DNA from: Magallana gigas
Lineage: Eukaryota
DNA length: 64,000 nt
Direction: 5' to 3'
Assembly: GCF_963853765.1 (NCBI RefSeq)
Contig: NC_088861.1
Span: 11,284,001-11,348,000 of the forward strand
Each line of letters opens with the position of its first letter. Positions within the stretch are counted from its first letter, which is position 1. Below, one piece after another: positions 18,828 to 35,600 of the stretch. The notes under the pieces are model-generated. The model ran no database searches, was not told the origin of the DNA, and saw nothing but the letters and a program-made list of their open reading frames with translations. Position numbers and translations under genes: made by a program.

Positions 18828-20234
18828 GTGTATTTAAAAAAATTACTTTTACAGAAACTTGTGATTCCAATACCATTTTTAAAGATGCTGGAAAAAGTCA
18901 CACAGACAGCTCACAAAATATTGAGGACAACATATTCCAGGTTTTACACCAGTGGTAGACCATCTCTGAGTGACCGATGGCAGACAGATAAAAACATCAT
19001 TATGAATACTTTTGCTCGCAGAAAGGTGATATCAGATAGGTACGGGGTTACGAATAAATCAGACGATTGTCCGATCACTCATGTGTCTATGAACCCGCCT
19101 CGTAAATTCCATGTACCGAGAGTGGACAATGAGATATTTCTTCAGAAATACACCAGAGGTATTATCGATCATCAGTATATGACGCTATTGGAACTTCCTA
19201 CAGTCTATTCTCCTCTGAGGGTTGATGTGGATGTTGAGAAAATGGATTCATCTGTTGATGTTGTCACAGAGAAGTTGATAGAGCAAATAATGAGTCTTTA
19301 CGCTGAAGAGAGTCTAAAATATTTGGCTGATCCAACGTCACTTAAAACTCAGGGGCTACTGACTGCTTATGTTATGCAGAGAAAGAAGAATTACATGGTG
19401 GACAGTGAGACTAAAGAAGGTCTGCATGCAATTTTTCATGATGTGGTGTTCCCATCCAATCTACACAATTCGCTGTTCCATATACCCATAGCCGAAGTTG
19501 TAGAAAACATGACACCAGGGGAAGGAAAGTTCAAAATCTTGGTCGACCAAATTGGGAAGAATCCATGGTTTATGCTGGGATCCCAAAAGCATTGTGATCT
19601 CTATCCATATACTGTGGAATATGTTTGGAAGTATGGAGAAAAACTGATGCCATTCACGCTGAATATGAATTCAGAGAGTGAAGTGTTTCATTGGGTATCA
19701 AAGTTTTCTATTCGGCATAAGGAACCTAGTGAATATTGTGTTGAGGCATCAGGTGATCTGAAAAATGAAATTCTGTCTATTGAAGAAAGTGGAGAGGAAG
19801 AACTAAGTGTCCTTAATGCATCTAAATCCAAGGCTTCCAGTCATTTTCAGCCTTATGTCAAAAGTTATTATGGCAAATCAAGGAGACAACAAAAATTTTG
19901 TGATATAACCGTGAATAAGCTGATAATAGATTTGGGAAATCTGTTAGATCTATATGATGTTGAAATTTCAGATACTTATAAATCATGGTCCTCAATTGGG
20001 TTTGCATTGAAAATTTTGTGTGAAAGTTGTGATGAATGTGAAAATGAATTCAAAGAGTTGTGGTTTTCTTTTTCTGAAAAATCAGCTAAATTCAATCCAT
20101 CAGAATGTGAGAAGACCTGGAATTCGTTGGACTCATCCAAAGGGGATGTTCTGTTTGCCAAAAGAATACTACTGAAATATGCAAATGAGTGTGACATCAG
20201 TGCTAAATATAAAACTTTTCTAACTCATCTTTAA
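18828..20234 (+). CDS. Intronless archaeo-eukaryotic primase (AEP) of the large-DNA-virus D5/C962R N-terminal type plus a PriCT-2 domain, with no SF3 helicase. Likely start ATG 18885 or 19002.
   Basis: N-terminal THVSM...KF motif (~19077); motif I SPLRVDVD (DxD at 19224-19232); motif II KEGLH (19413-19427); motif III DQIGKNPWFMLGSQK (~19545). The C-terminus carries the PriCT-2 signature DTYKSWSSIGFAL...WFSFSEKSAKFNPSECEKTWNSL. The frame is open for 468 codons. Confidence 0.85.
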   Translation: MYLKKLLLQKLVIPIPFLKMLEKVTQTAHKILRTTYSRFYTSGRPSLSDRWQTDKNIIMNTFARRKVISDRYGVTNKSDDCPITHVSMNPPRKFHVPRVDNEIFLQKYTRGIIDHQYMTLLELPTVYSPLRVDVDVEKMDSSVDVVTEKLIEQIMSLYAEESLKYLADPTSLKTQGLLTAYVMQRKKNYMVDSETKEGLHAIFHDVVFPSNLHNSLFHIPIAEVVENMTPGEGKFKILVDQIGKNPWFMLGSQKHCDLYPYTVEYVWKYGEKLMPFTLNMNSESEVFHWVSKFSIRHKEPSEYCVEASGDLKNEILSIEESGEEELSVLNASKSKASSHFQPYVKSYYGKSRRQQKFCDITVNKLIIDLGNLLDLYDVEISDTYKSWSSIGFALKILCESCDECENEFKELWFSFSEKSAKFNPSECEKTWNSLDSSKGDVLFAKRILLKYANECDISAKYKTFLTHL

Positions 20235-20784: not shown

Positions 20785-23700
20785 ATGTATCGGAGATATA
20801 GGACAGCAGAAAGTCAACACAAGCGTGTAAGTTGTTATACTTAAGTAAGATATCTATGTGTAATCGATAGCATGCAGAACATGTCAAGATGTCATTTCCA
20901 TCTTACATGATAGTTAAAGCATCGAATTCTTAAATACGGTCGACACTCTCTTTTACATCGGTGTTCATTTGTATGATTTGAAAAATTATCTTTCTAAAAA
21001 TTTGTTGATGCTAATACGAATAAACAAAGATTTATGGTTAAAAGATATTTTTGATGCACATAGGCACGTAGAATCGGTGCATGCAGGCACGTAGTATCGG
21101 GGGGGGGGGGGGGGGGGGGGGGGCTGCCCCCTTTTTCTCGCAGCAAACATTTTGCTTAAATTGACAATGTTAAAAGTGAATTGAAATGGAATTGCCCCCC
21201 CCCCTTCCTATTTTGTGAGCATGTATGCAACACTGAAGTGAAAGGAAGGAAATTAACAGTAAAATTGGAAATTGAAGTTATAAGTACAATTCAATTTAAT
21301 TCCTTATTGACCAATTAGGGGCCATCAAGGGGCAGCATGAAGATTATACAATAAACATTCATTCACACACAGATTAGGATTTTTGTTTTGTTTTATTTTT
21401 TGTTTTGTTTTGCTTGTCAAGAGTTTTTGGATGAGTCTGCCCACACCCCCCTCCCCATCTCCACCTGACACTCAAATACAATGCTACGTATGTGCCTGGC
21501 ATGTACAATGCTATTATATTTTATGTATAATGTAATTATATTACAAATCTCGTTATTGGTATTTACAGGAAAAAGAGAAAGCTGAGGCAATAGTAAATGC
21601 TTGTTGGGAGCATGTAGAAAAACAGTGTCAAAACATCAAGCCTCACCCTGTAGATTCTGACAAGTCTTCTGAAAATAACGGAGCATGGAGAATAGTGAGA
21701 GTGTTTGTATCATCAACATTTACAGATTTCTTCTGTGAAAGAGAAATTTTAGTAAAAAAGGTAGGCAAACATCTTTAAAATCATTTTTCAAACATTCAAA
21801 ATTTTTCTAAAATCAAATTTTAGGAGATTAATCAATTTTTTAAAATCAAATATTTAAACAAGAGGTACTTCAGGTTTTCAAACTCTTTTCAGATTTTGCT
21901 GTCGTTACAGTTTTTACTTTTTATTAAAAATTATTTTTAAGAGGATTTTTTTTAAAGATAATGATGAAAAAAACCCCAGTAAGATATACTGGGTATTTAC
22001 AAACTCTTTGAAAAATAAGTGTTTAATGTCTCTAAATCATGAATAGGTGTTTCCCGAATTGAGAGAATGGTGTGAGGAGAGGAAAATTCACCTCATCGAC
22101 TGTGACCTGAGGTGGGGTGTTCCAAAGGACACCAACTCGGAGGAGACCATTCGGTGCTGCATGGAGGAACTGGACAGATGCCACACAGAGACCAATGGCT
22201 GTCCATTTTTCATCAATTTATTGGGAGAAAGGTAACAATTTAGATTTATATACAAAGTTTCAAACCACCATGCAATTAGCTAAATGCATATTTTGGGTCT
22301 ATGCAATTTATAGAAGTGATAATTTTTATAATTATATTCGTAGCTGTGGACCATCATTCAATCTTCTCTCCTCTCTTTCTTTCTCTCTTCTATATGGTAT
22401 ACACAGCAACTAAAATATTGTCCAGAAAAATTGGATCAGACTCAAAGGTATGGCATTGAAAAGTTGTTAATTATCTTGAATTTGATTCTGTGGTGGAACA
22501 TGTAACTTGTGTTGGTGAAAATTTAACTACCGGCTAATCATACTTTAGGGTCTTCATATTCATATAAAAAATTTATGCATAATGTCTGCAAAACATATTA
22601 CATGGAGGAAATTTAGCATTGTTACTGGGCTTATAATTAATTCCTTTTTCTTGCAGTTACGGGTTGTAGCTAACCATCAGTAACTTTTTACAATGCATAT
22701 GACTCCATGACACAATCAAATAGTAGTTGTGCAAGTTTCATTTCAATTCAGTATACTAATTTTCTTTAGATTTACATGCATGTAATAAATTTACCAAAAA
22801 TATGCCTCAGACACCCCCTTTGGAAAACTTAAATAACCAAATAATCGTCGGACCCCCTCCCCCCCATCTCCCCCTCCACCCCCCCCCCCCCCCCAAAAAA
22901 AAAATTCTGGATCCACGCATGATGTGGGGATTGAATTTTCATTGATTTTATGTATTCCTTCTATTAACATGCACATTTGCATTCCTACTTTTGGTACACA
23001 TATTGTTATTAGCTTTCTTAGATACATGAATGTCATATTCCTTTCTGTGATGTAACACATGATTATTACATATACAAAGCATTATCTTTTTTGAAAGCCC
23101 ACTAACATTTTTTTATACTAAATTATGATTTCAAATTATATGAGCTCCAAATTAACCTAGCTAAGATATGGGTGAAGGGTGCATTCAATCATTTGTAATC
23201 AATTCGATTTACTAGGAAAATTGAAATAAAATAAAATCATTTGAAAAAAAAAAATTTGATGACTGTCTTGTTTCAGACATTTCCTTCAATATTGCCAAAA
23301 AAAGTGAACTATTTATAAGTCAGTTAGATGTCAAGATTATTAATTATCATGCGATCTTCCATCTACGATTTATAGGGCCGTGGAAGCTACACATGTATAT
23401 ATAAATTTAATCTGCAACACCACTCTGTACATTAAATACTTTTGAAACAGACTGACATGATATTCAAGTCACTGTACTTTATCTGATATGTACATGCATG
23501 TATAATTATGGAAAGTTACACCGAATTCAAATTATCAATAAACTTTATTACAAAATCTTCCAAAATTATCTATCAATTATGATCAAATTATGATTTGATT
23601 TCTACAGATATGGATGGATTCCAGAGGATCAAGATCTAGGGAGTGATTTAAAGGATGAGTATTCCTGGGTGTTGAACTCATCAATCACATTTATGGAAAT

Positions 23701-26700
23701 CCTTCATGGTGCTTACAGGTAAAAGTATCTTGCAAAAATATATATTCACCCAGCATTTTTGAATGGAAGTTCTTACGAATGATATAAAAAAAAAGTAATA
23801 TCATTCCTTAGAACTTTTGATATATACAGTCCCAAATGCTCTCTCTCTCTCTCTCTCTCTCTTATAAGGCATAAAACTTGTTAAATTAATTAGTCAAGAT
23901 GAAGTTATATCTTGCTTTTGAAACGACTGTAATGATAAACAGGCAAAAATCACCATGACATCAGTGTTCAGTGAATGAGCATTTGTAATTGGTAGAAGGC
24001 TCCTGGCTTGGAATAGGAAAAATTGAAATTGACATATTAGTAATTAAGATACATGTTCGTTAAATTTTATTAATAGCAGTTTTTAGAATATGTTAACTTT
24101 AAAATCAACTTAATAGATATGTATGCATCTGTTTGAACTATTGTATGTTAAGTGACATTTTCTTATAGATTTGGTAATCCAAATGCACTGTTTCTTCTGA
24201 GGAACTCTGAAGCTATTAAAGAAATCCCAGAAGATTTTCAAGACAGATTTGTAGATAAAGAAGTTCTAAAAATGTGCCATTTGAAGGTAGGTACATGTCT
24301 TTAAATAAGGAATAAGGAATCATTCTTTGAGTATTATGAGGTGATAATTTCGGTCGGGGTGTGATCAAATCAAATAAAGTCCGAAGGGCTTTATGATAGA
24401 TTTGATCACACCCCGACTGAAATTATCATCTCATAATATATATTCAAAGAATGATTCCTTATTACTTATATTTATATAATTTTAAGCCATCGTACGATTA
24501 CATATTTAAATATTAATAAGCAAACCCCGCTGGAGCCTCGATTTGGCGTCATTTGTATTATGGGTTATATAGTACAAAATCGATTCGTAGTGTTATCACA
24601 GGCAAAGACAGTGGAAAATGTAAATATATAAATATCATGAACAACACCAGAGAAAATTTCTTTTTAAGATATTTTAATAAAACCTTTAATTAAATACAAT
24701 TGCAACATGCTTTAAATTTATGTAGCTTTTTGTCTTTTCTTAGGAGTTGAAGAAAAAGATAAAATTGAAATTTCCAAACCAGCTGTTTGAATATGATTGT
24801 AAATACAGTGGTCTATCTGAAAAAGCTGGAAGGAAAAGGGTAGGATATTATGATAAAGGCCTCATATATTCTTAAAAATATAAAGAAAAAGCTTAGGATT
24901 TTCAAAATTCGCCGCTGAAATGTTTAATAAGGCACAGCATGAATATAATTAATATTACATCGTGAGATTAATAAATTTTCCATTGTAGGTCATCCTGGAA
25001 GGTCTGGACACCTTTGCTGAGAAAGTATTGACATTTTTTAAAGCAAGAATATCAGAGTTTTATCCAGAGGAAAAAGGAAAAGATACAGAAGTGGACATAG
25101 GTACTGTATATTGAATTAAGCCATGAAGGAAGAAGAACAAACCAGAAATTGTGACAGTCATGAATAATGGTTGTATTTTTATAGATTGCGAAGCCTTAAG
25201 TTTATAAAAGAAATAGGAAAATTCATAATTCATATCTAAAATAAGATATTTTGACAAAATAATTACTACTAAGATTTTTTTTAGATCTTTTGAAGAAATT
25301 GTATGATTTCTATATTCATAATTTAATGTTTTCTTTTTACTGATATTAATAGAATACATTTGACTTTTATTGTTTCAGTACTAAGTTGAAGCATATTAAT
25401 GTGTTGTTTTCAGAAAGCCTAGAACAGAGGAATTTTCTGGAAAGGAAAACCTATCTTGTTATTGGACAGGAGGAATTAATAAATATGTTCTTGGCATACG
25501 CTAAAGGAATAGATCCTGTTGACTTGAAAATAGAGGGTAAGTAATATCAAGTATATAAATGAAATAGTTTTGTTCTTTTTTGGCTTCAAATAACATGCTA
25601 TTGATCATTCTACCTTTTATAATTCTGTGTTTTATATAGTAACTATAATATGAATGCAATAAATTACATAGTTGATTTTTCTTCGAATTATATTTTCATG
25701 TACATTCTCTTTATAGGAGAAAAGTCTGCATTTGTTCGTAAGTATTAGTGCAGTGCAATAAAATCACCCTTTCTTTTTATGTAATAAAAATACAAAAACC
25801 ACTTTTATTAGATAGTATTTACTAGTAATCTAAAGGTAAGAACCTATTGTAGTACACATATTAATAATTTTCATACACGTGCTTCAGCCCCAATTAGGTA
25901 CTACGTACTTGCTAAAATTTTAAGGTTTTTTAACATGGACGTTTTTTCCTGGGGAAAAAAAATCAATGAAGGTTAACTGCCTCTGAAAGAAAGTAAAAAT
26001 ATGAATTTCAAAATGAACACAGTATTCTTGTTGCATTGAATGTGTTCAAATTAAATATTAATATCACAGGGGATCCAGAATTCTGGCAAAATGATGAGGA
26101 CGATAACCTATTGTTGTGCCTGACGGGAGCTGCAGGCCAGGGGAAAACCTCAGTAATGGCAAAGTTTGTGAAGAAGGCTTTACAGGTATTCATTAACTAT
26201 TATAATATAATAAATATAAATATATATATATATAAATATCACCGTTTCCAGTTTACAAAGTGTCTAAATGCATGCATACAGTTTATAAGGAAGTGTGTAC
26301 ACTGCTGTATAAAAAAAAACCGTGTAAAAGTTTTTTTCCCAGTTGTTTATATAAATATAATAGTATATATAAAAGGCACAGCTTCATATGAATTCATAAT
26401 AGTTAAAAATTACAAATTTCATTTAAAAAAGGGGTAAAAATATAGATTAGTTCTCAAAACATTGAACACTGGTAAAAAATAAGTGTTTGTGATCATGTTT
26501 GAAAAATAAGCTGTAACTGAAATAAATTTAACGTTGATTTTAAAAATGAATGAGTGCATAAGTTAAACGTTTTCTTTTTGTTTGTTCATTGTGGTCGGTA
26601 ATAATGGTTTGTGGCTGGTGGCCTTTAATGTTATATAATCCTCCCTCTCCTTCTTTCCCCACCCTCTCCTTTTAAGAGAGTTTGTCAGAGTAGAGTTGAA

Positions 26701-29700
26701 CTAACAGAAACAAACTGACAACGATGACTGCAGCGTGTCCGATGATTTCTGAAATGAATAAAACTCTCTTCCATTTCCCCGGTTTGTCTTCACAACATGG
26801 CCGCATCCTTACAAATAAGACTGTAATAAGCAATACAGCCTTGCATATAGCAAACCAGGCTTTCGCGTATTGTATGAAGGTGAAAGGATCCTTGGCTTTT
26901 AATGCAACGATCAAAGCCATCAGTGTTTGTGGCAGGTCCTCTATCCAAGTCCCAACCGCTGACAGAATTATAAGAATTTCGGCAGCCTTTTCATGCAAGA
27001 GAGTGCCTTCTCTGTTAACGAGAAATTTCGCAATGCTTGCTAAGAATATTAACACCAAAATTAAGATGCCGACGATCGCAAACACTAAAATTGCCTTTTT
27101 CAAATTATCTGCCTTGTTGATGCCTTCTTGAGTTGTATCGAGAATTACGATATAGAAGGCCCAGTCCAGTATTAAGTCTACCAGCAACAAAAAGCAACCG
27201 CCGATGACACCACAACGCGTGAGGCTGCAGAGTTTTGTACACATTTTGATTGGTCTCTTCCTGGCTAAAAAACGTAGCATAAAGAGTACTTATAAAGCAC
27301 TTAGTATATTTGATTAAAAAAAATAATAAAAGAAGAAGAATATCAAATGTACTAAGGATTCATTAAAGTTTGGAGTTGTTATATATTAGCTCCATTGAGT
27401 CCAAAAAATAACACCCTCATGAACCATTAAAGGGTTGATAGTCCCCCAATGTTTGTCCCCATGAATTTTAATGATTCCACAGTACTAGATTGCAAATTAG
27501 CACCAAATTAATTATTATACATTTAATTCATAACTAATTTTTAAATATCAAATGGGAAGATATGCTTTTATTTTTTTTTTTATTAATTTTTTATTATTTG
27601 TCAAGTGCACGCTTGATATTTTTGTAGCATCAATAAAAATTGTAAGATTTTTTTTGCCCCTGTATGTCATTATAAGTCATTAAAGTTAAAATACATTGAG
27701 GGAAACTAGAGTCGGGATGACAATTCTACAATGTAACTACTTTGTCGATTACATTTCAATATTTTCAATTAAAGTTGGTTTTTCCTGGCACTCGATAGTT
27801 TATCTCATGTCTCACAAACATAAAGTTTATCCTTCCGCAATTGTTTAAACTACATAAGGATTTTTTGGAATATTGTGCTCGTTTAGTTTCCTCATTAGCA
27901 TTGATTTAAGCATGTATTGATTTAAGGCGAGTAGCAGTGATTCTACAAGTGATGGCACTTTGCCATGGTAACTTCAACTAGAAAATTTGTAAATTTGATA
28001 TTGTGGAAACAAGCTTAAAGTAGTTTTTATACAAACAGTGGATAAATACATGAGTGTATGATCCCTCTCCGATAACAATAGTTCATTGATAACAATTAAT
28101 GAAAAAAAATCCAAACATGAGTAGTTTGTAAATGTTAAGTTACTTGTTACATCACTATCGAAACTGATACTTCACTAGCTACTGCGAATCAAAGCATTTG
28201 TATATTTTTTGGCTCAGCATTGCAGTTCATAATGCAGTGTTCACTAAAACACATTTAAAAACGTATCAGTTATGACATGCTTCAAAACTTGTTTATTTTG
28301 TTCACGATAGTTATGCTTTTGAACAAGAGTTATTGATTAATTATTTAATTATACCGTATATCTTTTTTATGGATGCAAACATTTACATGCACCTTTGGTT
28401 CCAAAATGAAAATTTGCTTTATAGATGATTTTGCTAAACTATCATCCCACAGAAAAATTCCAGTTGAACAGTTTTAAAATTAAGATTTACAAAATAAATG
28501 TTTGTTATCTTTCAGTTAAATTTTACAACACGGAACCGAAATATAAATGACAGTCACTTGAGTTACTTTAGTAACCATGAAACATATATTACACGTACTT
28601 GCATTATCTATGTTAGTCATAATCATGCTATGTTGAATAATAAAAACTATCTCTATCTTACCTTTCAAGAAGTGGGATTTACGAAATATTGTTATGATTA
28701 ACGATATGGTATACCCACTTTTAGGGATGTTATAAATGAATTTGCACGAAGAATAATGAAGGAATAGGAAACCACAATGAGACTTATATTAGAGTATATA
28801 CGGCATTTCCTTATTTCCCTTTTGGTCTGAGTAGTCATTGACGATATGTGAGTTTTAATTATGTATTAAGTCGTTAGTGACAGTATATGCAGGGATGACA
28901 ATAAGTACCTCAACAAACCTGCTTCCGATATTAGAGACTACGTCAATTAATGGGAACAAAAAAGAATGGCTAATAAATGATAATTTGTGCCAATTTTGTC
29001 TTTCAGTTTTTTAGTCTTTTCGTTTTAGCAACTAGAAGTGGTATATAATTTTTTTCCTGAAATTATTGTGGCGCAAGTGTACCAATAGGTGCGACATTCG
29101 TATTCTATGGACATATTTCTATTTTTGTTAGTAAAAAGGAATTAAACTAACCCACTCTCTTATGATAGAGACTGAATTTTATGTTTTTAACAAGTTAAGT
29201 TGCGGGGTTTTACAAGTTTTTGTTCATTGCATTGACTTTCCTCATTCATTTGGAATTTACCTGAGTTTCGCTTCACGCGAATTTCACGTTAAATTCACCT
29301 GATTTTTCACGCGAAGCTTTCTTTGTCTAAAGGAGGGATTGAATGTCTTTTACCATTTTGTTGGAATCTCGGAGACGAGTCAGCAAACAGACAATTTGCT
29401 TCGTCGGATGACAGAATTTATCAAAGGTGAAAAAATAGGTCAGTACTATTTTTTCCTACATTATTTACTGTAAAAACAATAGTTTTAGGATTCTTTCATT
29501 TTTTTCTTTTTCTTTATTGCAAGTTTTTATTATTTATATAAAAAAGATGTGCCAAAGGAGACGTTCGACCTAAAAAACTTTTACATGAAGATTATGAGAG
29601 AGGAATTTGAAAAACTGCGACAGAACAAAAATCAAATGCTGCTTGTTTTAGATGGAATGGACGAGGTACGATTATAATATATATCTAGGTGACATGTATG

Positions 29701-32624
29701 GTACTTTTAAGACGGATAATCATGATATATATTCATTGATTTTATTTTTTGCTACTGCATATTGACATCTTTAAACTCAAAAATGTTACTTACAAATTAT
29801 TCATACAACTAATATTGACCACATGATATCTCACTAAAAAACCCAGAATTGTTGAGTATGTTAGCTGCAAGAATCTGAAAGACAGAAACTGCTTAGTCAC
29901 ATTTATGTATTTGGAATACTGTATTCAGGGGTAATATTCGCCCTTGTTTTATTTTAACCCTATTCGTCCTTGATTTTATCGGACGAATTTAAGATTGGGT
30001 GAATTCGGATCTCCAATGTCTCATTTTATTTCGCTTTAAACACAACTGTGCCTGGGCAAATTCAAGACGGGGCAAAACTGCATGTTTGCAAGTGTAGAAG
30101 GGCGAAAATTACACGGGACGAAAATGAACCTGTATACAGTGTCTTTAACCATTACTCCTGCTTGTTTTTGAAGTTAAGCAATCGGGATTCATATGAGCAA
30201 TTGAAATGGTTACCGCCTCGTTTACCTGGTAGTGTTCGAGCTGTGGTGGCTACATCTAGTGCGCATCTTCCAACTCTTCACCGGGCAAAGGAGCATGCCT
30301 GCTTCTTCCTGGAGATTCCCTCGTTAAAATTGTCTGTCGCCAAAGAAATACTATCTCAATACCTTATGCTTTATAATAAAGTAAGAATAATATTCTTGCC
30401 TTAAAATTCAAAATTAAAAAAACTATCGTTTTATAAGGCTAACAGTAACTGTTTGTTCGTGCATTCATGACATGCCAAATATTATTTGGCGACGAAAACA
30501 AAGTGTGAAACAAAACTCTTTCTAAAAGCTAACGTAATAACGAGGCTTGTCAATTTTTTTTAAAAAAAAACTCTTTTATCCGGGTTACACATATCTGAGC
30601 AATAGTACATTTTTAATTTGAATTTTTACCTTAGAAACTCGACAAGGCCCAAATGGAGCTCATTTTATCCAAACCCAACTCATTGAATCCACTGTGGCTC
30701 ACGCTTTTAGCAGAACAACTTCGAACTTTCGGGGATTTTAGAACTCTAGATCAACACATCAAAACACTCTCTGATTCTGTAAATGGCTTGTTGGAGTTTA
30801 TTGTGAAGGATCTTGTTCTTAACGATGACACTGGGCAAATGGAAAAGGTGAAACATACTTGTTTTTTTTAACAACACCTCATTTTACATATTGCTAATAA
30901 GATTAATTTTATGATATATTTTTACTGACGGGTTTCAGGCCCTTTGTATCTTGGTTCTAACAAATGGATTACCTGAAATAGAGATGCAGCAGATTTTGGG
31001 CGATATCAATGAGCAAGAGCCTCTTCCTGACCTGTATTGGTCTAAAATTCGGAGGGCTCTCAAACCTTTCATCTACTTTGCTGGAGCTATTCGAGACATC
31101 AGATTCATACATGGAGCCTTTTATGAGGTGATTTAATGTCAAAATGATTTCAACGTGTTTCGAGGGTTTGGACTTTTGACTTATTTTGACCCACTATTTT
31201 TAAAGTTAAGGTGGTATATCTCATTTGAGTGTGTTTTATGCATTCCTTCTGAACAAATTTTAGTTTTTAGCAAACTACATTTATACAAATTATACCATTT
31301 GCTAAGTGTAATTAAAAAACCCACCTCCCCAGACATCTTTGAAAAAGTACTGATTGTATTGGTTTCTTTTATATAGAATGCCGAGATGCTATATCTTAAA
31401 GAGAAAAAGACTCAGATCATGTACCATACCATTATTGTCGATTATCTAATGAACTGGTGTAAAAATGAAACACTTAAACGAACGAGGGTGCCTTACCATT
31501 GCCAAAGAGCTGGATTACCTGACAAGTACGAATCTTAGAATCAATACATATATAAGACTTGGATGTGGAATTGATTTAATATTTGTATTGGAAAAAATAG
31601 AATTATGGTGTAAACTAGACAGAATTTGTACTGATCAGAGGTTATTTTGAGTATCCTTTGTTATAATACAGGTTGGTTGATTTCATGAGACATTCTGAAA
31701 GTGCTTCAGCTCTACCTGATTTTATGAGAAGCCAATTCTTAAAGGTTAGTGTGGTAATTTGTATGCAATTTCATTCAATGTACTGCATGTGCTGGCCAAA
31801 AATGAATAAATTTGATTTGCAATTTTAATTTAGAGTACATATTAAATAAATCATCCAGTATGCCAAGTCAATGTTAGCAATTATTATTACAAAAAATGAA
31901 AACCCACATATTTCAGAGATTGCTTTTTGATTTTTTGTTGTAAGTTTGATATTATGCTTAATATAGTACATGCATTTTCATCTAATATTTGCGTTGATAC
32001 TCGATGAATTTCACCTAGTATGTACCCTCTGTTGACGTTTGTAAAAATCGGTGTATGAATTAAAAACATGTTCCAAGTAAAACTTGTACCCATAGCAATC
32101 TCTCATGACGTTTGATGTAGTAATGTTGTATATTCAAATCTGTGCATGCTGTTTCTCTGTTGGTCCAATTTTAGAAAGCATATCAAATTTTGTAACCAAT
32201 CTCAACATTTGAAACATATGAATCGATATGTTTAATATTAGCTTTCTAATTATTATAGTTTGCCCGCTGTATACAAATAGCAGATCCAGTTTTGCAAGTC
32301 ACTATGCCAGTCATTTTGTGCAGGGGATGCTCCTGTTCATATAGGGGTTTCACAACCAAACATTTCCCGCTTAATAAAGACGCCTGTGTTATTTGTGGTA
32401 CTCATGTCGTCAAAGGACGTTTTTCAGGCGACGCCTATCTTTGCATTAGACACTCTTTTGGTCAAAGTAAGCTCATGGGAAAATGTTGTTTGTGTGAAAT
32501 ACCCGTACGGAAAGACGAAAACGGGAAAGTGGCTGACTTCATGGGCTCCCAGGGAAAGTTGTGCAACTTTTGCTCGTTTGGAGTAGATTCCAAACGTTGT
32601 TCTTACGTAGGCAAAAGAATTTGA
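20785..32624 (+). CDS. 834-aa DUF4062-NACHT (TEP1/NWD1-like STAND NTPase) with a C-terminal PHF5/Rds3-like zinc domain. Exons: 20785-20826, 21569-21760, 22047-22231, 23608-23718, 24169-24286, 24744-24839, 24989-25100, 25414-25536, 26070-26185, 29333-29426, 29547-29665, 30174-30380, 30635-30847, 30939-31127, 31377-31525, 31672-31744, 32259-32624.
   Basis: All 16 introns are GT-AG with consistent phases; total 2505 nt. DUF4062 motif RVFVSSTFTDFFCERE...DLRWG...LLGERYGW; Walker A GAAGQGKT; YHFVG; Walker B LLVLDGMDE; WLP..LP; NPLWL..LAEQLRTFG. Last-exon ligand pattern is C, CxxC, CxxC, CxxH, CxxC, CxxC, C. The first coding exon is the least certain. Confidence 0.88.
21084..21498. mobile_element. 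MITE of the CAGGCACGTAGCATC-terminus family with poly-G/C tracts. Relatives near 42478-42715, ending at ~59768, and 63586-63637.
   Basis: Left end CAGGCACGTAGTATC(G)n; right end ATGCTACGTATGTGCCTG (imperfect inverse). The same termini recur elsewhere in the window. Confidence 0.65.
23839..23862. repeat. (CT)n microsatellite
   Basis: About 12 CT units in an intron. Confidence 0.9.
24311..24628. mobile_element. Non-autonomous foldback element whose first ~150 bp form a long hairpin
   Basis: AATAAGGAATCATTCTTTGAGTATTATGAGGTGATAATTTCGGTCGGGGTGTGATCAAATC ... GATTTGATCACACCCCGACTGAAATTATCATCTCATAATATATATTCAAAGAATGATTCCTTATT (24311-24463). The right boundary is approximate. Confidence 0.75.
26672..27280 (-). 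CDS. 202-aa multi-pass membrane protein with XK-related-like motifs; intronless CDS nested antisense in intron 9 of the NACHT gene
   Basis: About 5 hydrophobic segments; TM1 motif VDLILDWAFY and mid-protein WIEDLPQ recall the D..xDW and E..PQ motifs of XK/XKR-family proteins. A strong polypyrimidine tract plus AG lies just 5' of the ATG on the minus strand (~27300-27345), so the 5' UTR is probably spliced. Confidence 0.8.
   Translation of the reverse strand: MLRFLARKRPIKMCTKLCSLTRCGVIGGCFLLLVDLILDWAFYIVILDTTQEGINKADNLKKAILVFAIVGILILVLIFLASIAKFLVNREGTLLHEKAAEILIILSAVGTWIEDLPQTLMALIVALKAKDPFTFIQYAKAWFAICKAVLLITVLFVRMRPCCEDKPGKWKRVLFISEIIGHAAVIVVSLFLLVQLYSDKLS
29918..30140. mobile_element. Short MITE in intron 11 of the NACHT gene
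   Basis: TIRs ACTGTATTCAGG and CCTGTATACAGT (1 mismatch). It explains the spurious N-terminal extension of ORF 30048-30404. Confidence 0.7.
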
Positions 32625-35600
32625 CGAATCATTATATTTTAAAACTATATATTTAGTTTTCTATTTAATCGAATTGCAAAATACAGTTACTTGTATTGAT
32701 TCCTCTAATGAAATCATAGCATACATTACAATATTTGATGAAATATTACACTGGATATCCTGACTGTATTATGTACCAAAAATTGTTTTACAAGATAATT
32801 ATTGTTGATACTAGCAATATATACAAAATAATAACAATTTTAACAAAATAATATGATAATATAATATAATCTATATTTTATTTTAAAATCCTGTTATTGC
32901 TCTTGACGATTTTTTTAACTATCAAACTGCCTACTATTTGTTAGTTTGATAGCATGATTCAAGCCCTTTATTTAGAAATGAAGCATTAAAGTTTAAATAG
33001 TATCAATGCATATTTTGTTTACCAAATACAACCGAGTAAAGAACATTTTGTTTTTTCTAAGGTCTTTGTTATGCAATACAGTATTAGAAACATGGAAAGA
33101 ACCAGACTTATGAAATGTAGTTACATCATCGAAGTCATCCTACTCAAAAAGATGATTTATAAGCTCATATTGTACATGTATTCAGAATTTCGGGAATTAA
33201 CACCAAGGTATAAGGTAAATAAAAAGAAAATTTAAACGTTTATTTAGACTAACGGCACCGTTTATTAACACTAGCTTCATCCGTCATTTACTGCTGCTGT
33301 TGGCCAAGGACGTTATCTTATTTCTTTTCACTTTGACATGTGCAATAGATATATTACAATTTTAAATTATTTATAGTATGACTTATACTTTTTACAACTG
33401 CATTGTTGTTTTTAAAGCCTTTTTTTATCGTGCAAGTGTCTTTTTTCATTTTCTTTGACATTTAATTTACGATATTTCAACATTTACTTTTTATATATCG
33501 AAAATTTAATCTCTATAAGATAGATTTGGAAACATTCTGGAAACAAAATTGTATATTAAACAAAAAATCATGTTAATATTGATAAACTTTTATTTTTTAT
33601 TATTATTAGTTATCTAAATAAATGAATATATCAGTGATAAACAGTGTTGTTTTATTTATTTGCCCGTGCCTTTTCCTGGGGTTGGAGGGCGAATCGGATA
33701 CGGAGACATGGATAGATCGCGATATGCAAATACCATTAACATATTGGATGTGAAAACCCTTCACTGCAACAAATATACATCTTGTGGCTCAAGGATAGCT
33801 AATAACATACCAAAGGGAGATGTAATAATTATACTTATTAGATCTAAGTTAATAAAGAATGAATTTACAAAAAGTAAATATTGAATTTTACATGTATCTG
33901 TGTAAAGTAAAAATTTCTAAAATCGTATAAAAATTTTGACTTAAATGTTAACTTTAAAGACAGTCATTGGCTTTGTGAAATGTGAAAATTGGGTTGTCAA
34001 GTGTGTAAACAATTCAAAACATGCAGTTGTGTTCTCTGACGGCTAATCCGTAATCCAATATGAGAATCTATGTTTCGATAATGTGGTAACATTTGATTGG
34101 TTGGTCACTCCCATGACTTCCGAGTAGCATCAAACCCCGCTAGCCTTACCTACACGTTTGTGCAATAACATGTATTTTCCTGCGTTTTAAATGAGAGCTT
34201 GAAATATGAGAAAATAATACTTCTTAAGCCAAAAGTAAATTTTGAATAGAATATGCATTCTTTAGGATTTTTTAAATTTTAAATACTAGTATGTCCCTCT
34301 GGAGTGCATTTCAGACAGGCAGTTAACCTACATAAATCCCACGGCAAAAATGCACTATGACCATATTAATATCTCTTCACTTCCTCTTTTCTTCGTTTTG
34401 TTCTTTTTTTTCCACCAAAAATGTATGTCTGCACACAATTTGCATACCTTAGGTACAAAGCTCAAGTAAATGTCTTCTTCTCTAATATGTCAAAATTGAA
34501 GTTCTATAGAGTGTTACAACTTTTATTTTCATGTACTTTATATTTACTAAGTAATAAAATACCGAACATTTACTTATTATGCACTTTCGTTATATGAAAA
34601 AATAGCTTTATTTTGTTATTCAACCAGTGTAATGTCATGTCTTTTAAAAGAAAGATGATAAAAGTTATAGGAACTTTAAATTTGTAAGAATTAAAAATCA
34701 AATGGTTTTAGTCTTTTACTCATTTGAACGTAACTTGTATTGAAGTAAATGAAAAATTTTAAAATGCTAATATCATTGAACTAATCTAAATTCAGAAAGC
34801 CACATCTTTGACCATGAAAATGTAATTTTTTCTCATAAGAGATGCAGATTTTAGACTGCTTTCTCAAATGCAGATCTGCTGAAAATCTGCATCACAATAC
34901 ATAGGTCAGAAATCCTTATGAATAAAGTTACATGTATGAAGATGTCAAATATTTAACTCATAATGACCACATTAACGTATTGTGAAATTTATTTTCGTTT
35001 TACTAATCAGACCATGAAGACAATTGATCCTTATTAATGTATGAAAGTAATGTGGCTTAAGTTGTCTATAGATTCGACAAAATAGTAAGTATATATCGTG
35101 TTTTTATGCAAATAACACATTGATTTGGCGACAAAGATTGCATATTTAATGAATGTATACATTTTTTCGATAAAAGGTACTTTTAGTAAACCTCACTATT
35201 CTGATTTCCTATTTATTTCTTAAAGCTATAGAGTTTCTACATTCTTATACACGTCAGAACTGTGTTAATGCATTAAATGAAAGGTAATATTAAAAGGTAA
35301 AGGTAATATTAATTAACATCCATATATTAACTTGCTGAAAGTGAGAATAAATATGAAGTAAGTTAGCATAGGATACGGGGCCATTGATGATTAAGGTGCA
35401 TCTGCGACAAACCTAAACGTTTCATTGTTTAACAAAAGCAATAATTGTTCTTTTTTTCATGCAATGTTTAGATATTCCTTTAATTTAAAATATGTTTTAG
35501 AACATGACTGTTTATAAATCTGGCTAGGTCATACTGCCAGTTTATGTCATATAATATAAAATGCAACGGTAGTTAATTTATTTTTAGCAAATGTTTAAGC

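What the first reader, a model, noticed from the sequence alone, without database searches (positions are those of the whole stretch)
20785..32624. NLR-like STAND protein whose sensor end is a complete PHF5/Rds3-type three-zinc domain
Seen: 17 phase-consistent exons give DUF4062 - NACHT (GAAGQGKT, LLVLDGMDE) - helical region - terminal exon FARC...LCRGC...ACVIC...YLCIRH...KCCLC...LCNFC...KRC. Established: PHF5A/Rds3 (U2 snRNP SF3b, branch-point pocket) has the 12-ligand pattern C, five CxxC, C, folding as a three-zinc knot. TEP1/NWD1-type DUF4062-NACHT proteins normally end in WD40 or TPR repeats. Here the same pattern, with one Cys-to-His change and PHF5-like context (CVIC, DAYxC, CxxCxFG), replaces the repeat sensor. 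Inference: an innate-immune receptor with an integrated spliceosome-derived module acting as a decoy for pathogen effectors that target SF3b, or as an RNA/nucleic-acid sensor. I know of no functional description of this architecture.
Basis: partly seen in the sequence, partly recalled or inferred. Interest (0 to 1): 0.85.

Follow-up and report, generated by a model that had tools for sequence, protein, structure and literature searches.

The report
Ancient STAND protein with PHF5-like zinc knot
This expressed oyster gene encodes an NLR-like switch protein (TIR-like NADase domain, NACHT ATPase) that ends in a three-zinc domain predicted to fold like the splicing factor PHF5A, and it is a single-copy gene conserved from corals to lamprey, so not an oyster-specific immune invention.

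Summary
The gene at 20785-32624 (+) is real, spliced and expressed. My model is identical to RefSeq XP_034334981.2 (Magallana gigas, misnamed "telomerase protein component 1"; 845 aa).

RNA contigs from four runs confirm the 31744>32259 splice. They run through the stop into an unspliced 3'UTR.

The last exon encodes 121 aa with 12 zinc ligands (C, CxxC, CxxC, CxxH, CxxC, CxxC, C). All 12 are invariant in 51 orthologues. Its AlphaFold model (pLDDT 88.7) matches only PHF5A/Rds3 across five structure libraries (Z 5.7-6.7). Sequence similarity to PHF5 is weak and below Pfam's cut-off.

- The gene is single-copy in this genome.
- The gene tree follows the species tree from cnidarians through molluscs, echinoderms and amphioxus to lamprey.
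- The knot shares about 20% identity with the near-invariant PHF5A and lacks its C-terminal tail.
- A recently integrated SF3b decoy is therefore unlikely.

Most likely this is an ancient STAND switch. A basic zinc knot, possibly RNA-binding, would act as sensor, and a very conserved DUF4062 TIR-like (NADase-type) domain as effector. I found no published description.

The parts
20785..20826 (+). coding exon 1 (aa 1-14, start ATG)
   Evidence: GT donor; identical to the N-terminus of XP_034334981.2
21569..24286 (+). exons 2-5 (21569-21760, 22047-22231, 23608-23718, 24169-24286): DUF4062 TIR-like domain, aa ~53-200, with VFVSSTF (aa 59) and S-I-T-F-M-E (E170)
   Evidence: Pfam DUF4062. Identity is 49-78% across phyla, and S, T and E170 are invariant. 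The fold search gives weak NDT/TIR hits.
24744..25737 (+). exons 6-9 (24744-24839, 24989-25100, 25414-25536, micro-exon 25717-25737): linker between TIR-like domain and NACHT
   Evidence: Colinear tblastn with orthologues. The micro-exon is required to match RefSeq exactly.
26070..29665 (+). exons 10-12 (26070-26185, 29333-29438, 29547-29665): NACHT P-loop GAAGQGKT and Walker B LLVLDGMDE, interrupted by a 3.1-kb intron
   Evidence: Pfam NPHP3_N/NACHT. The junctions are seen in RNA contigs, and the loose end at 29331 reads the end of exon 10.
30174..31744 (+). exons 13-17 (30174-30380, 30635-30847, 30939-31127, 31377-31525, 31672-31744): helical (APAF-1-like) region, aa 448-724
   Evidence: All junctions are seen in RNA contigs. 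The region is conserved in orthologues.
32259..32624 (+). terminal coding exon: PHF5/Rds3-like three-zinc domain (aa 725-845) plus stop codon
   Evidence: 12 invariant ligands. AF2 pLDDT is 88.7. PHF5A/Rds3 are the only structural matches. Single copy in the genome.
32625..33550 (+). 3'UTR, unspliced
   Evidence: RNA contigs run contiguously from 32257 to about 33552

Best explanation
The gene encodes an ancient, single-copy metazoan STAND NTPase of the TEP1/NWD/NPHP3 clade. It is not telomerase protein TEP1 itself. The usual C-terminal WD40/TPR sensor is replaced by one compact, strongly basic three-zinc domain with the PHF5A/Rds3 fold. This domain is most likely a very old, diverged paralogue of the spliceosomal PHF5 knot, captured as a single exon.

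Shown here:
- the gene model and its expression;
- the domain order and the invariant ligands;
- a unique PHF5-like predicted fold;
- deep vertical conservation and a single copy in this genome.

Inferred mechanism: the zinc knot is the ligand-binding and autoinhibitory end. Binding of a conserved ligand relieves inhibition of the NACHT module. That ligand is most plausibly an RNA or other nucleic-acid feature, less likely a conserved protein. The NACHT module then oligomerises and brings the N-terminal DUF4062 TIR-like domains together. By analogy with TEP1 and bacterial Swarozyc, these domains would hydrolyse NAD+ through the invariant Glu170. Whether the output serves immunity, cell death or a housekeeping checkpoint is not known.
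For: Gene model and expression:
- The 18-exon model is identical to XP_034334981.2.
- Splice junctions and the 3'UTR are seen in RNA contigs.

Zinc knot:
- 12 ligands are invariant in 51 sequences.
- The AF2 model has pLDDT 88.7 and pTM 0.82.
- Foldseek PDB: the top 16 hits are all PHF5A/Rds3, with probability up to 0.99.
- Swiss-Prot AFDB: the top 8 are all PHF5A/Rds3/ini1.
- VIA-align against 48,161 PDB representatives: only two chains reach Z>=2, both Rds3/PHF5A (Z 6.1 and 5.8; 83 aa at 3.1 A). The second look gives Z 5.7-6.7 for 14 entries.
- ESM Atlas: the PHF5 cluster scores TM 0.50/0.57, the next cluster 0.32.
- Pfam PHF5 is the most frequent weak hit (10 of 51 members).
- The family HMM scores oyster PHF5A above 1990 of 2000 shuffles that keep the Cys positions fixed.
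- Net charge is +3 to +15 in all members.

Conservation and copy number:
- Orthologues carrying the knot occur in Cnidaria, Mollusca, Brachiopoda, Nemertea, Rotifera, Echinodermata, amphioxus and lamprey.
- The gene tree mirrors the species tree with about one copy per species.
- The domain is single-copy in this genome.

Effector domain:
- The TIR-like domain is the most conserved part, with an invariant S-x-T-x-x-E.
- DUF4062 was shown to be a TIR-like NADase in TEP1 and in bacteria (bioRxiv 10.64898/2026.05.01.722283).
Against: - Sequence similarity to PHF5 is weak. It scores 15.5 bits against a cut-off of 26.7. The profile does not hit PHF5A chains in PDB or the genome's own PHF5A.
- Local alignments come in several registers because both families contain an internal repeat.
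- The fold is a prediction from a network trained on PHF5A/Rds3 structures. I could not inspect the coordinates, so zinc-site connectivity and the knot are unverified.
- No ligand, NADase activity or oligomerisation has been shown.
- In the cited preprint, human NWD1, NWD2 and NPHP3 showed no NADase activity in vitro, so a DUF4062 domain does not guarantee catalysis.
- The N-terminal fold search gave only weak NDT/TIR matches mixed with generic Rossmann-like folds.
- Deep single-copy conservation fits a housekeeping role at least as well as pathogen sensing.
Confidence: 0.55

Rival explanations
1. The zinc knot is an integrated decoy that mimics host PHF5A/SF3b, so that pathogen effectors aimed at the spliceosome trip an immune receptor.
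For: The fold is PHF5-like. The domain sits where STAND/NLR sensors sit. Plant NLRs are known to carry integrated decoys (general knowledge; NLR-ID survey PMC10934728 listed).
Against: - The knot is only 18-25% identical to PHF5A in structural alignments. PHF5A's core exon is almost invariant from oyster to mammals, so the knot does not copy the surface an effector would target.
- PHF5A's C-terminal tail is absent: 0-8 residues follow the last Cys.
- The segment aligned to the PHF5A stretch around Tyr36/Arg38 is not conserved in the family.
- The fusion predates bilaterians and is single-copy and vertically inherited.
- Divergence of the knot is similar to that of the NACHT and linker regions, with no hypervariability.
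Confidence: 0.05
2. The knot is not a danger sensor. It is a constitutive docking module that tethers this NACHT/TIR-like enzyme to an RNP or a HEAT-repeat scaffold, much as TEP1 is tethered in the vault. The protein would then have a conserved non-immune cellular role.
For: - The gene is a single-copy orthologue with a species-tree topology.
- The effector domain is extremely conserved.
- Relatives NWD1 and NPHP3 have non-immune roles, and TEP1 is a vault RNP component.
- PHF5A itself is a structural bridge inside an RNP (PDB titles).
Against: There is no direct evidence for any partner. Apart from the ligands, the knot surface is poorly conserved across phyla (mean column identity 32%), which is unusual for a fixed docking interface.
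Confidence: 0.22
3. The C-terminal domain is an independent, convergent multi-zinc module (tandem zinc ribbons). The PHF5-like model would then be an AlphaFold bias triggered by the 12-ligand pattern.
For: - No PHF5 hit is above the Pfam cut-off.
- hmmsearch against PDB gives only C2H2 and Rpb9 noise.
- The inter-ligand spacings differ from PHF5A: 17/18/16/11/22/9 here (read directly from the sequence) against 12/4/13/9/11/10 in PHF5A.
Against: - The number and order of ligands are the same as in PHF5A.
- Both share the unit K-C-x-x-C ... [LI]-C-x-x-[CH]-x-[FY]-G, repeated twice in each family (direct reading).
- The Cys-fixed shuffle control gives about 0.005.
- PHF5 is the only fold found by two different aligners in five libraries, with nothing else at Z>=2.
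Confidence: 0.15

Closest known systems
PHF5A / Rds3 / Ini1 (Pfam PF03660), SF3b subunit of U2 snRNP
   Same: Both have twelve zinc ligands in the order C, five C-x-x-C/H, C. The predicted three-zinc fold aligns over PHF5A residues 8-92 (Z 5.7-6.7, 79-84 residues, 2.7-3.5 A). Both contain an internal repeat of a C-[VI]-[VI]-C ... C-x-x-C-x-[FY]-G unit, and both are basic.
   Different: - Identity is about 20%, and the score is below Pfam's cut-off.
- The seventh ligand is an invariant His.
- The loops are longer.
- There is no C-terminal tail.
- The knot is encoded by one exon, whereas the oyster PHF5A knot is split over at least three exons.
- It is fused to a STAND NTPase instead of being a free 110-aa spliceosomal subunit.
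- The genuine PHF5A gene lies elsewhere (G000 contig C7).
TEP1 / NWD1 / NWD2 / NPHP3: DUF4062 (TIR-like) - NACHT - helical STAND proteins
   Same: The N-terminal DUF4062, the NACHT with Walker A and B motifs, and the helical region come in the same order. The closest non-family hits are DUF4062-NACHT-TPR/WD40 proteins.
   Different: There is no TROVE/vWA (TEP1) and no WD40 or TPR array. The sensor position holds a 121-aa zinc knot. The RefSeq name 'telomerase protein component 1' reflects only DUF4062-NACHT similarity.
Bacterial Swarozyc and other DUF4062 defence proteins (bioRxiv 10.64898/2026.05.01.722283)
   Same: Both have a DUF4062 TIR-like domain with a conserved candidate catalytic Glu, coupled to an accessory sensing domain.
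   Different: This is a eukaryotic, intron-rich gene. It has a NACHT module between effector and sensor, and a different sensor. No activity data exist.
Plant NLRs with integrated decoy domains (NLR-ID)
   Same: In both, a non-repeat domain is fused to an NLR-like switch at a sensor position.
   Different: NLR-IDs are lineage-specific, often paired or expanded, and resemble the host target closely. This fusion is pre-bilaterian and single-copy, and resembles PHF5A only in fold.

Membership tests
PHF5/Rds3 (PF03660) | Twelve zinc ligands in the order C, CxxC x5, C | tested here: met
   C4, C21/C24, C43/C46, C62/H65, C76/C79, C102/C105 and C114 are invariant in 51 sequences. One ligand is His.
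PHF5/Rds3 (PF03660) | Score above Pfam's gathering cut-off (26.7 bits) | tested here: not met
   The window domain scores 15.5 bits, E 0.021. 10 of 51 members hit, best E 8.7e-4, and none is over the cut-off.
PHF5/Rds3 (PF03660) | PHF5A/Rds3 three-zinc fold | tested here: met
   Tested on a predicted model only. PHF5A/Rds3 are the sole matches: Z 5.7-6.7, Foldseek probability up to 0.99, Atlas TM 0.50/0.57.
PHF5/Rds3 (PF03660) | Zinc-site connectivity and knotted topology | not testable with these tools
PHF5/Rds3 (PF03660) | Free ~110-aa SF3b subunit with a C-terminal basic tail, near-invariant across eukaryotes | tested here: not met
   The domain is fused to a STAND protein. Only 0-8 residues follow the last Cys. 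Identity to PHF5A is about 20%. The true PHF5A is at G000:C7.
PHF5/Rds3 (PF03660) | Binds SF3B1/SF3B3 and the branch-site adenosine | not tested
   No usable SF3B1 chain was available for co-folding. This needs a pull-down or a co-fold.
NACHT STAND NTPase (TEP1/NWD/NPHP3 clade) | Walker A GxxGxGK[ST] and Walker B hhhhD[GA]hDE | tested here: met
   GAAGQGKT is at aa 353 and LLVLDGMDE at aa 439. The G-K and D positions are conserved in the family.
NACHT STAND NTPase (TEP1/NWD/NPHP3 clade) | Pfam NACHT / NPHP3_N above cut-off | tested here: met
   Orthologues score 25.8-50.5 bits. PF24883, PF05729 and PF13271 are precomputed for the C. gigas protein.
NACHT STAND NTPase (TEP1/NWD/NPHP3 clade) | C-terminal repeat sensor (WD40, TPR or LRR) | tested here: not met
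   There are no repeat domains. Transcripts end after the zinc-knot exon.
TEP1 proper (the RefSeq name) | TROVE and vWA domains and a WD40 array | tested here: not met
   Pfam finds only DUF4062 and NACHT-type domains in orthologues.
DUF4062 TIR-like NADases | DUF4062 domain above cut-off | tested here: met
   Orthologues score 32.9-41.1 bits against a cut-off of 24.7. The window exon piece scores 19.9 bits.
DUF4062 TIR-like NADases | Conserved catalytic Glu (TEP1 E1008, KpSwz E97) | tested here: inconclusive
   An invariant Glu (E170, in S-I-T-F-M-E) lies about 115 residues into the domain, at a distance comparable with TEP1. It was not aligned directly to TEP1.
DUF4062 TIR-like NADases | NAD(P)+ hydrolysis | not testable with these tools
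   A biochemical assay is needed.
NLR with integrated decoy | The integrated domain closely mimics a host effector target, and the fusion is lineage-specific or diversifying | tested here: not met
   Identity to PHF5A is about 20%. The gene is single-copy. The tree is species-tree-like from Cnidaria to lamprey. The knot shows no excess divergence.

The most novel reading that the evidence does not exclude
The knot is a true PHF5 paralogue that still recognises what PHF5A recognises: a bulged branch-site-like adenosine or single-stranded intron RNA, or an SF3B1-like HEAT surface. The protein would then be an ancient metazoan guard of RNA or splicing integrity (aberrant or foreign RNA, or a hijacked U2 snRNP) that answers by NACHT oligomerisation and TIR-like NAD+ depletion. 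This pathway would have been lost in jawed vertebrates, insects and nematodes.
Probability: 0.12. Interest if true: 0.85.

Novelty: new variant of a known kind. Interest (0 to 1): 0.62.

Why it matters
DUF4062-NACHT proteins have only just been linked to TIR-like NADase chemistry (TEP1 in vaults, bacterial Swarozyc). What their sensor ends detect is unknown.

This branch has a small, single-domain sensor in place of a large repeat array. It is conserved one-to-one from corals and Hydra to amphioxus and lamprey, and its fold is otherwise known only from the branch-site pocket of the spliceosome. That makes it a compact system for asking how a STAND/TIR-like switch is triggered. It also extends the PHF5 fold, so far seen as a one-job spliceosomal module, to a second and very old context.

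The finding also corrects a misleading annotation ('telomerase protein component 1') that has been propagated across dozens of invertebrate genomes.

Tried and rejected
- phmmer of the domain against PDB sequences gave only a chance hit to a coronavirus protease. The family profile against PDB gave only C2H2/Rpb9 noise above E 0.1. Neither shows relatedness at the sequence level.
- The search for homologous proteins with the oyster PHF5A exon returned only exon fragments and mis-spliced models, with no full-length diverse PHF5 set. A proper profile-profile comparison with PF03660 could therefore not be made. I used hhalign against one assembled oyster PHF5A (P 0.0025) and a Cys-fixed shuffle control instead.
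- My first 17-exon model (838 aa) was superseded by the 18-exon model.
- The fold search of the N-terminal domain was only weakly informative.
- Co-folding with SF3B1 was not attempted. No admissible SF3B1 chain was available, and the report does not claim binding.
- RING, B-box and MYND readings of the Cys pattern were considered and rejected. The spacing lacks the compact C-x-H-x2-C core, and no such fold appeared above noise.
- The search of earlier findings returned nothing for this place.
- Literature searches by gene name and accession returned nothing.
Full report
**Gene and transcripts.** On the + strand an 18-exon coding model runs from ATG 20785 to the stop at 32622-32624. All borders are AG/GT. 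Translated, it gives 845 aa with no difference to XP_034334981.2, 'telomerase protein component 1 isoform X1' of Magallana (Crassostrea) gigas. This micro-exon is also reflected in orthologues.

Contigs of four RNA-type runs (two certainly RNA) carry the junctions 29438>29547, 29665>30174, 30380>30635, 30847>30939, 31127>31377, 31525>31672 and 31744>32259. A loose end at 29331 reads the end of the P-loop exon, which confirms 26185>29333. From 32257 the contigs continue unspliced past the stop to about 33550. So the transcript does splice 31744 to 32259, and it ends there instead of continuing into a repeat domain.

**Architecture.** The exon pieces give sub-threshold DUF4062 and NACHT/NPHP3_N hits. 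Full-length orthologues give both above cut-off, with nothing for the last ~115 residues. Walker A (GAAGQGKT, aa 353) and Walker B (LLVLDGMDE, aa 439) are present.

**The terminal domain.** The 121-aa terminal exon carries C4, C21xxC24, C43xxC46, C62xxH65, C76xxC79, C102xxC105 and C114.
- An exhaustive phmmer over 1.84 billion representatives found 18 relatives. All but one (P0014, a 382-aa repetitive protein matched only over residues 30-69, probably spurious) are terminal-exon fragments or 669-924-aa STAND proteins with the domain at the very end.
- In an alignment of 51 orthologous domains, exactly these 12 positions are invariant, including the His. Little else is conserved (R3, N39, G47, A59, L101, G108; mean column identity 32%).
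- Several fragment ORFs begin with translated polypyrimidine or intron sequence right before the R-C start. This suggests the domain is a single exon in other species as well.

**Is it PHF5-like?** At the sequence level the signal is weak.
- Pfam PHF5 is the only hit for the window domain (E 0.021, 15.5 bits against a cut-off of 26.7). It is the most frequent weak hit across the family: 7 of 15 and 10 of 51 members, best E 4e-4 to 9e-4.
- The family profile does not retrieve PHF5A from PDB sequences or from the oyster genome.
- hhalign of the family against the oyster's own PHF5A, assembled from its exons, gives P 0.0025. Ligands C43..C114 fall in register with PHF5A C30..C85.
- The family HMM scores PHF5A higher than 1990 of 2000 shuffles that keep every Cys in place. 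So non-Cys residues contribute.
- The several registers seen are explained by a unit present twice in both families: K-C-x-x-C ... [LI]-C-x-x-[CH]-x-[FY]-G.

At the structure level the signal is clean.
- The AlphaFold2 model, built from 15 sequences without templates, has pLDDT 88.7 and pTM 0.82.
- Foldseek against PDB: ranks 1-16 are all PHF5A or Rds3 (E 0.013-0.87, probability up to 0.99, TM by target 0.52-0.66). Probabilities then collapse to 0.06 or less.
- Swiss-Prot models: ranks 1-8 are PHF5A/Rds3/Ini1, aligned over query residues 2-117 and target residues 9-88.
- VIA-align against 48,161 PDB representatives: only two chains reach Z>=2, yeast Rds3 and human PHF5A (Z 6.1 and 5.8; 83 residues, 3.1 A). 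The second look gives Z 5.7-6.7 for 14 PHF5A/Rds3 entries.
- AFDB clusters: the family's own members come first, then PHF5 clusters.
- ESM Atlas: the PHF5 cluster scores TM 0.50/0.57, the next row 0.32.

Two caveats apply. The network was trained on PHF5A/Rds3 structures. I also could not inspect coordinates, so zinc connectivity and the knot are unverified.

**What it is not.**
- The oyster's genuine PHF5A lies on another contig and is split by introns inside the knot. Its core exon is nearly identical from oyster to mammals.
- The STAND knot shares only 18-25% identity with PHF5A, much of it the ligands.
- It ends 0-8 residues after the last Cys, so it lacks PHF5A's C-terminal tail.
- It is variable in the stretch aligned to PHF5A residues around Tyr36/Arg38. 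The importance of those residues for the branch-site pocket is from my own knowledge.

**Distribution.** A full-length search found the same ~800-1080-aa architecture in many bivalves, gastropods and a chiton. It also found it in Lingula, Lineus, a rotifer, sea stars, sea urchins, amphioxus, lamprey, and the cnidarians Pocillopora, Hydra and Rhopilema. These proteins are usually named 'telomerase protein component 1-like' or 'TPR repeat-containing protein DDB_G0287407-like'.

A maximum-likelihood tree of 49 proteins recovers molluscs (with bivalve and gastropod subclades), echinoderms and cnidarians as clades. It shows one sequence per named species, except for an amphioxus duplication. In this genome the domain profile hits only this exon (E 2e-27).

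No jawed vertebrate, arthropod or nematode appeared among the 120 best hits (E down to about 1e-49). This suggests loss, but it is not a proof.

**Rates.** The TIR-like domain is by far the most conserved part: 80-90% identity between confamilial or related genera, and 56-64% between phyla. It has 31 invariant positions, including S-x-T-x-x-E (E170). The zinc knot evolves about as fast as the linker and NACHT regions (52-89%; 24-30% between phyla) and is not hypervariable. The knot is basic in all 51 members, with net charge +3 to +15 and a mean of +9.4.

**Mechanism.** A 2026 preprint (10.64898/2026.05.01.722283) shows that DUF4062 is a TIR-like NADase in a bacterial anti-phage system and in human TEP1 (catalytic E1008). 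It proposes that the repeat sensors control NACHT-driven activation. NWD1, NWD2 and NPHP3 were inactive in vitro. My model of the N-terminal domain (pLDDT 85.4) has an alternating strand-helix (alpha/beta) secondary structure. Its best, weak matches are nucleoside 2-deoxyribosyltransferase, MilB and TIR domains. This is consistent but not decisive.

I therefore read the protein as a STAND switch. The basic zinc knot takes the place of the repeat sensor, and the TIR-like domain is the output. The steps ligand binding, then oligomerisation, then NAD+ hydrolysis are inferred, not shown. An RNA or nucleic-acid ligand is favoured by the charge and by the only known job of the fold. A fixed docking role in an RNP is the main rival. 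The SF3b-decoy idea is disfavoured for the reasons above.

**Novelty.** No paper in the library connects DUF4062/NACHT proteins with a PHF5-like domain or discusses this gene. Pfam and RefSeq leave the domain unannotated. It is a new variant (a new sensor module) of a known kind of protein, found in an old and widely conserved but unstudied orthologous group.

Noticed in passing
window 18828-20234 (+): A 468-aa open frame about 550 bp upstream of the gene's ATG encodes an archaeo-eukaryotic primase of the C962R type (AEP_C962R E 6e-39, PriCT_2 E 5.5e-12). This kind of gene is typical of large DNA viruses and of virus-like mobile elements. It is probably an inserted element or its remnant.
   Followed up: partly
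window 26672-27280 (-), inside the 3.1-kb intron 26186-29332: An intronless 202-aa ORF predicts several membrane helices. By language-model features it is nearest to a mollusc cluster auto-named 'XK-related protein family' (score 0.94). RNA contigs at 28592-29050, and a loose end at 28662 that reads sequence near 27250, suggest a separate spliced transcript nested antisense in the intron.
   Followed up: partly
window 29970-30166: Very high summed contig depth (44-129, against about 5-20 on the exons) and many different loose ends at 30083-30117. This is a dispersed repeat or transposon fragment in the intron just before exon 13, not part of the mRNA.
   Followed up: no
window 31745 onward (intron after exon 17); protein P0151: A database protein (733 aa) reads from exon 17 straight into the intron (…SQFLKVSVVICMQF), where P0151 ends. 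This intron-retention form would lack the zinc knot. RefSeq isoform X2 (737 aa) instead has a different N-terminus that removes the first half of the TIR-like domain. Neither was checked against reads.
   Followed up: no
window 32622-32650; protein P0001: A 96%-identical ORF from a public assembly carries W in place of the stop and runs on for 59 more residues. Contigs of the laid runs show a G>T and a 1-base deletion at 32626. So there is allelic or sister-species variation right at the stop codon.
   Followed up: no
whole gene; XP_034334981.1 vs .2: The two RefSeq versions of the C. gigas protein differ at 25 of 845 residues, and none of the differences lies in the 121-aa zinc knot (about 3.6 expected). 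The gene is quite polymorphic, but the knot is not, within the species.
   Followed up: partly
L001 (G000:C7:31498105-31501284): This is the oyster's genuine PHF5A gene. The knot is split over at least three coding exons (L001 355-381, 1513-1677, 2087-2173). None of these introns falls in the STAND zinc knot, which is encoded by one exon.
   Followed up: partly
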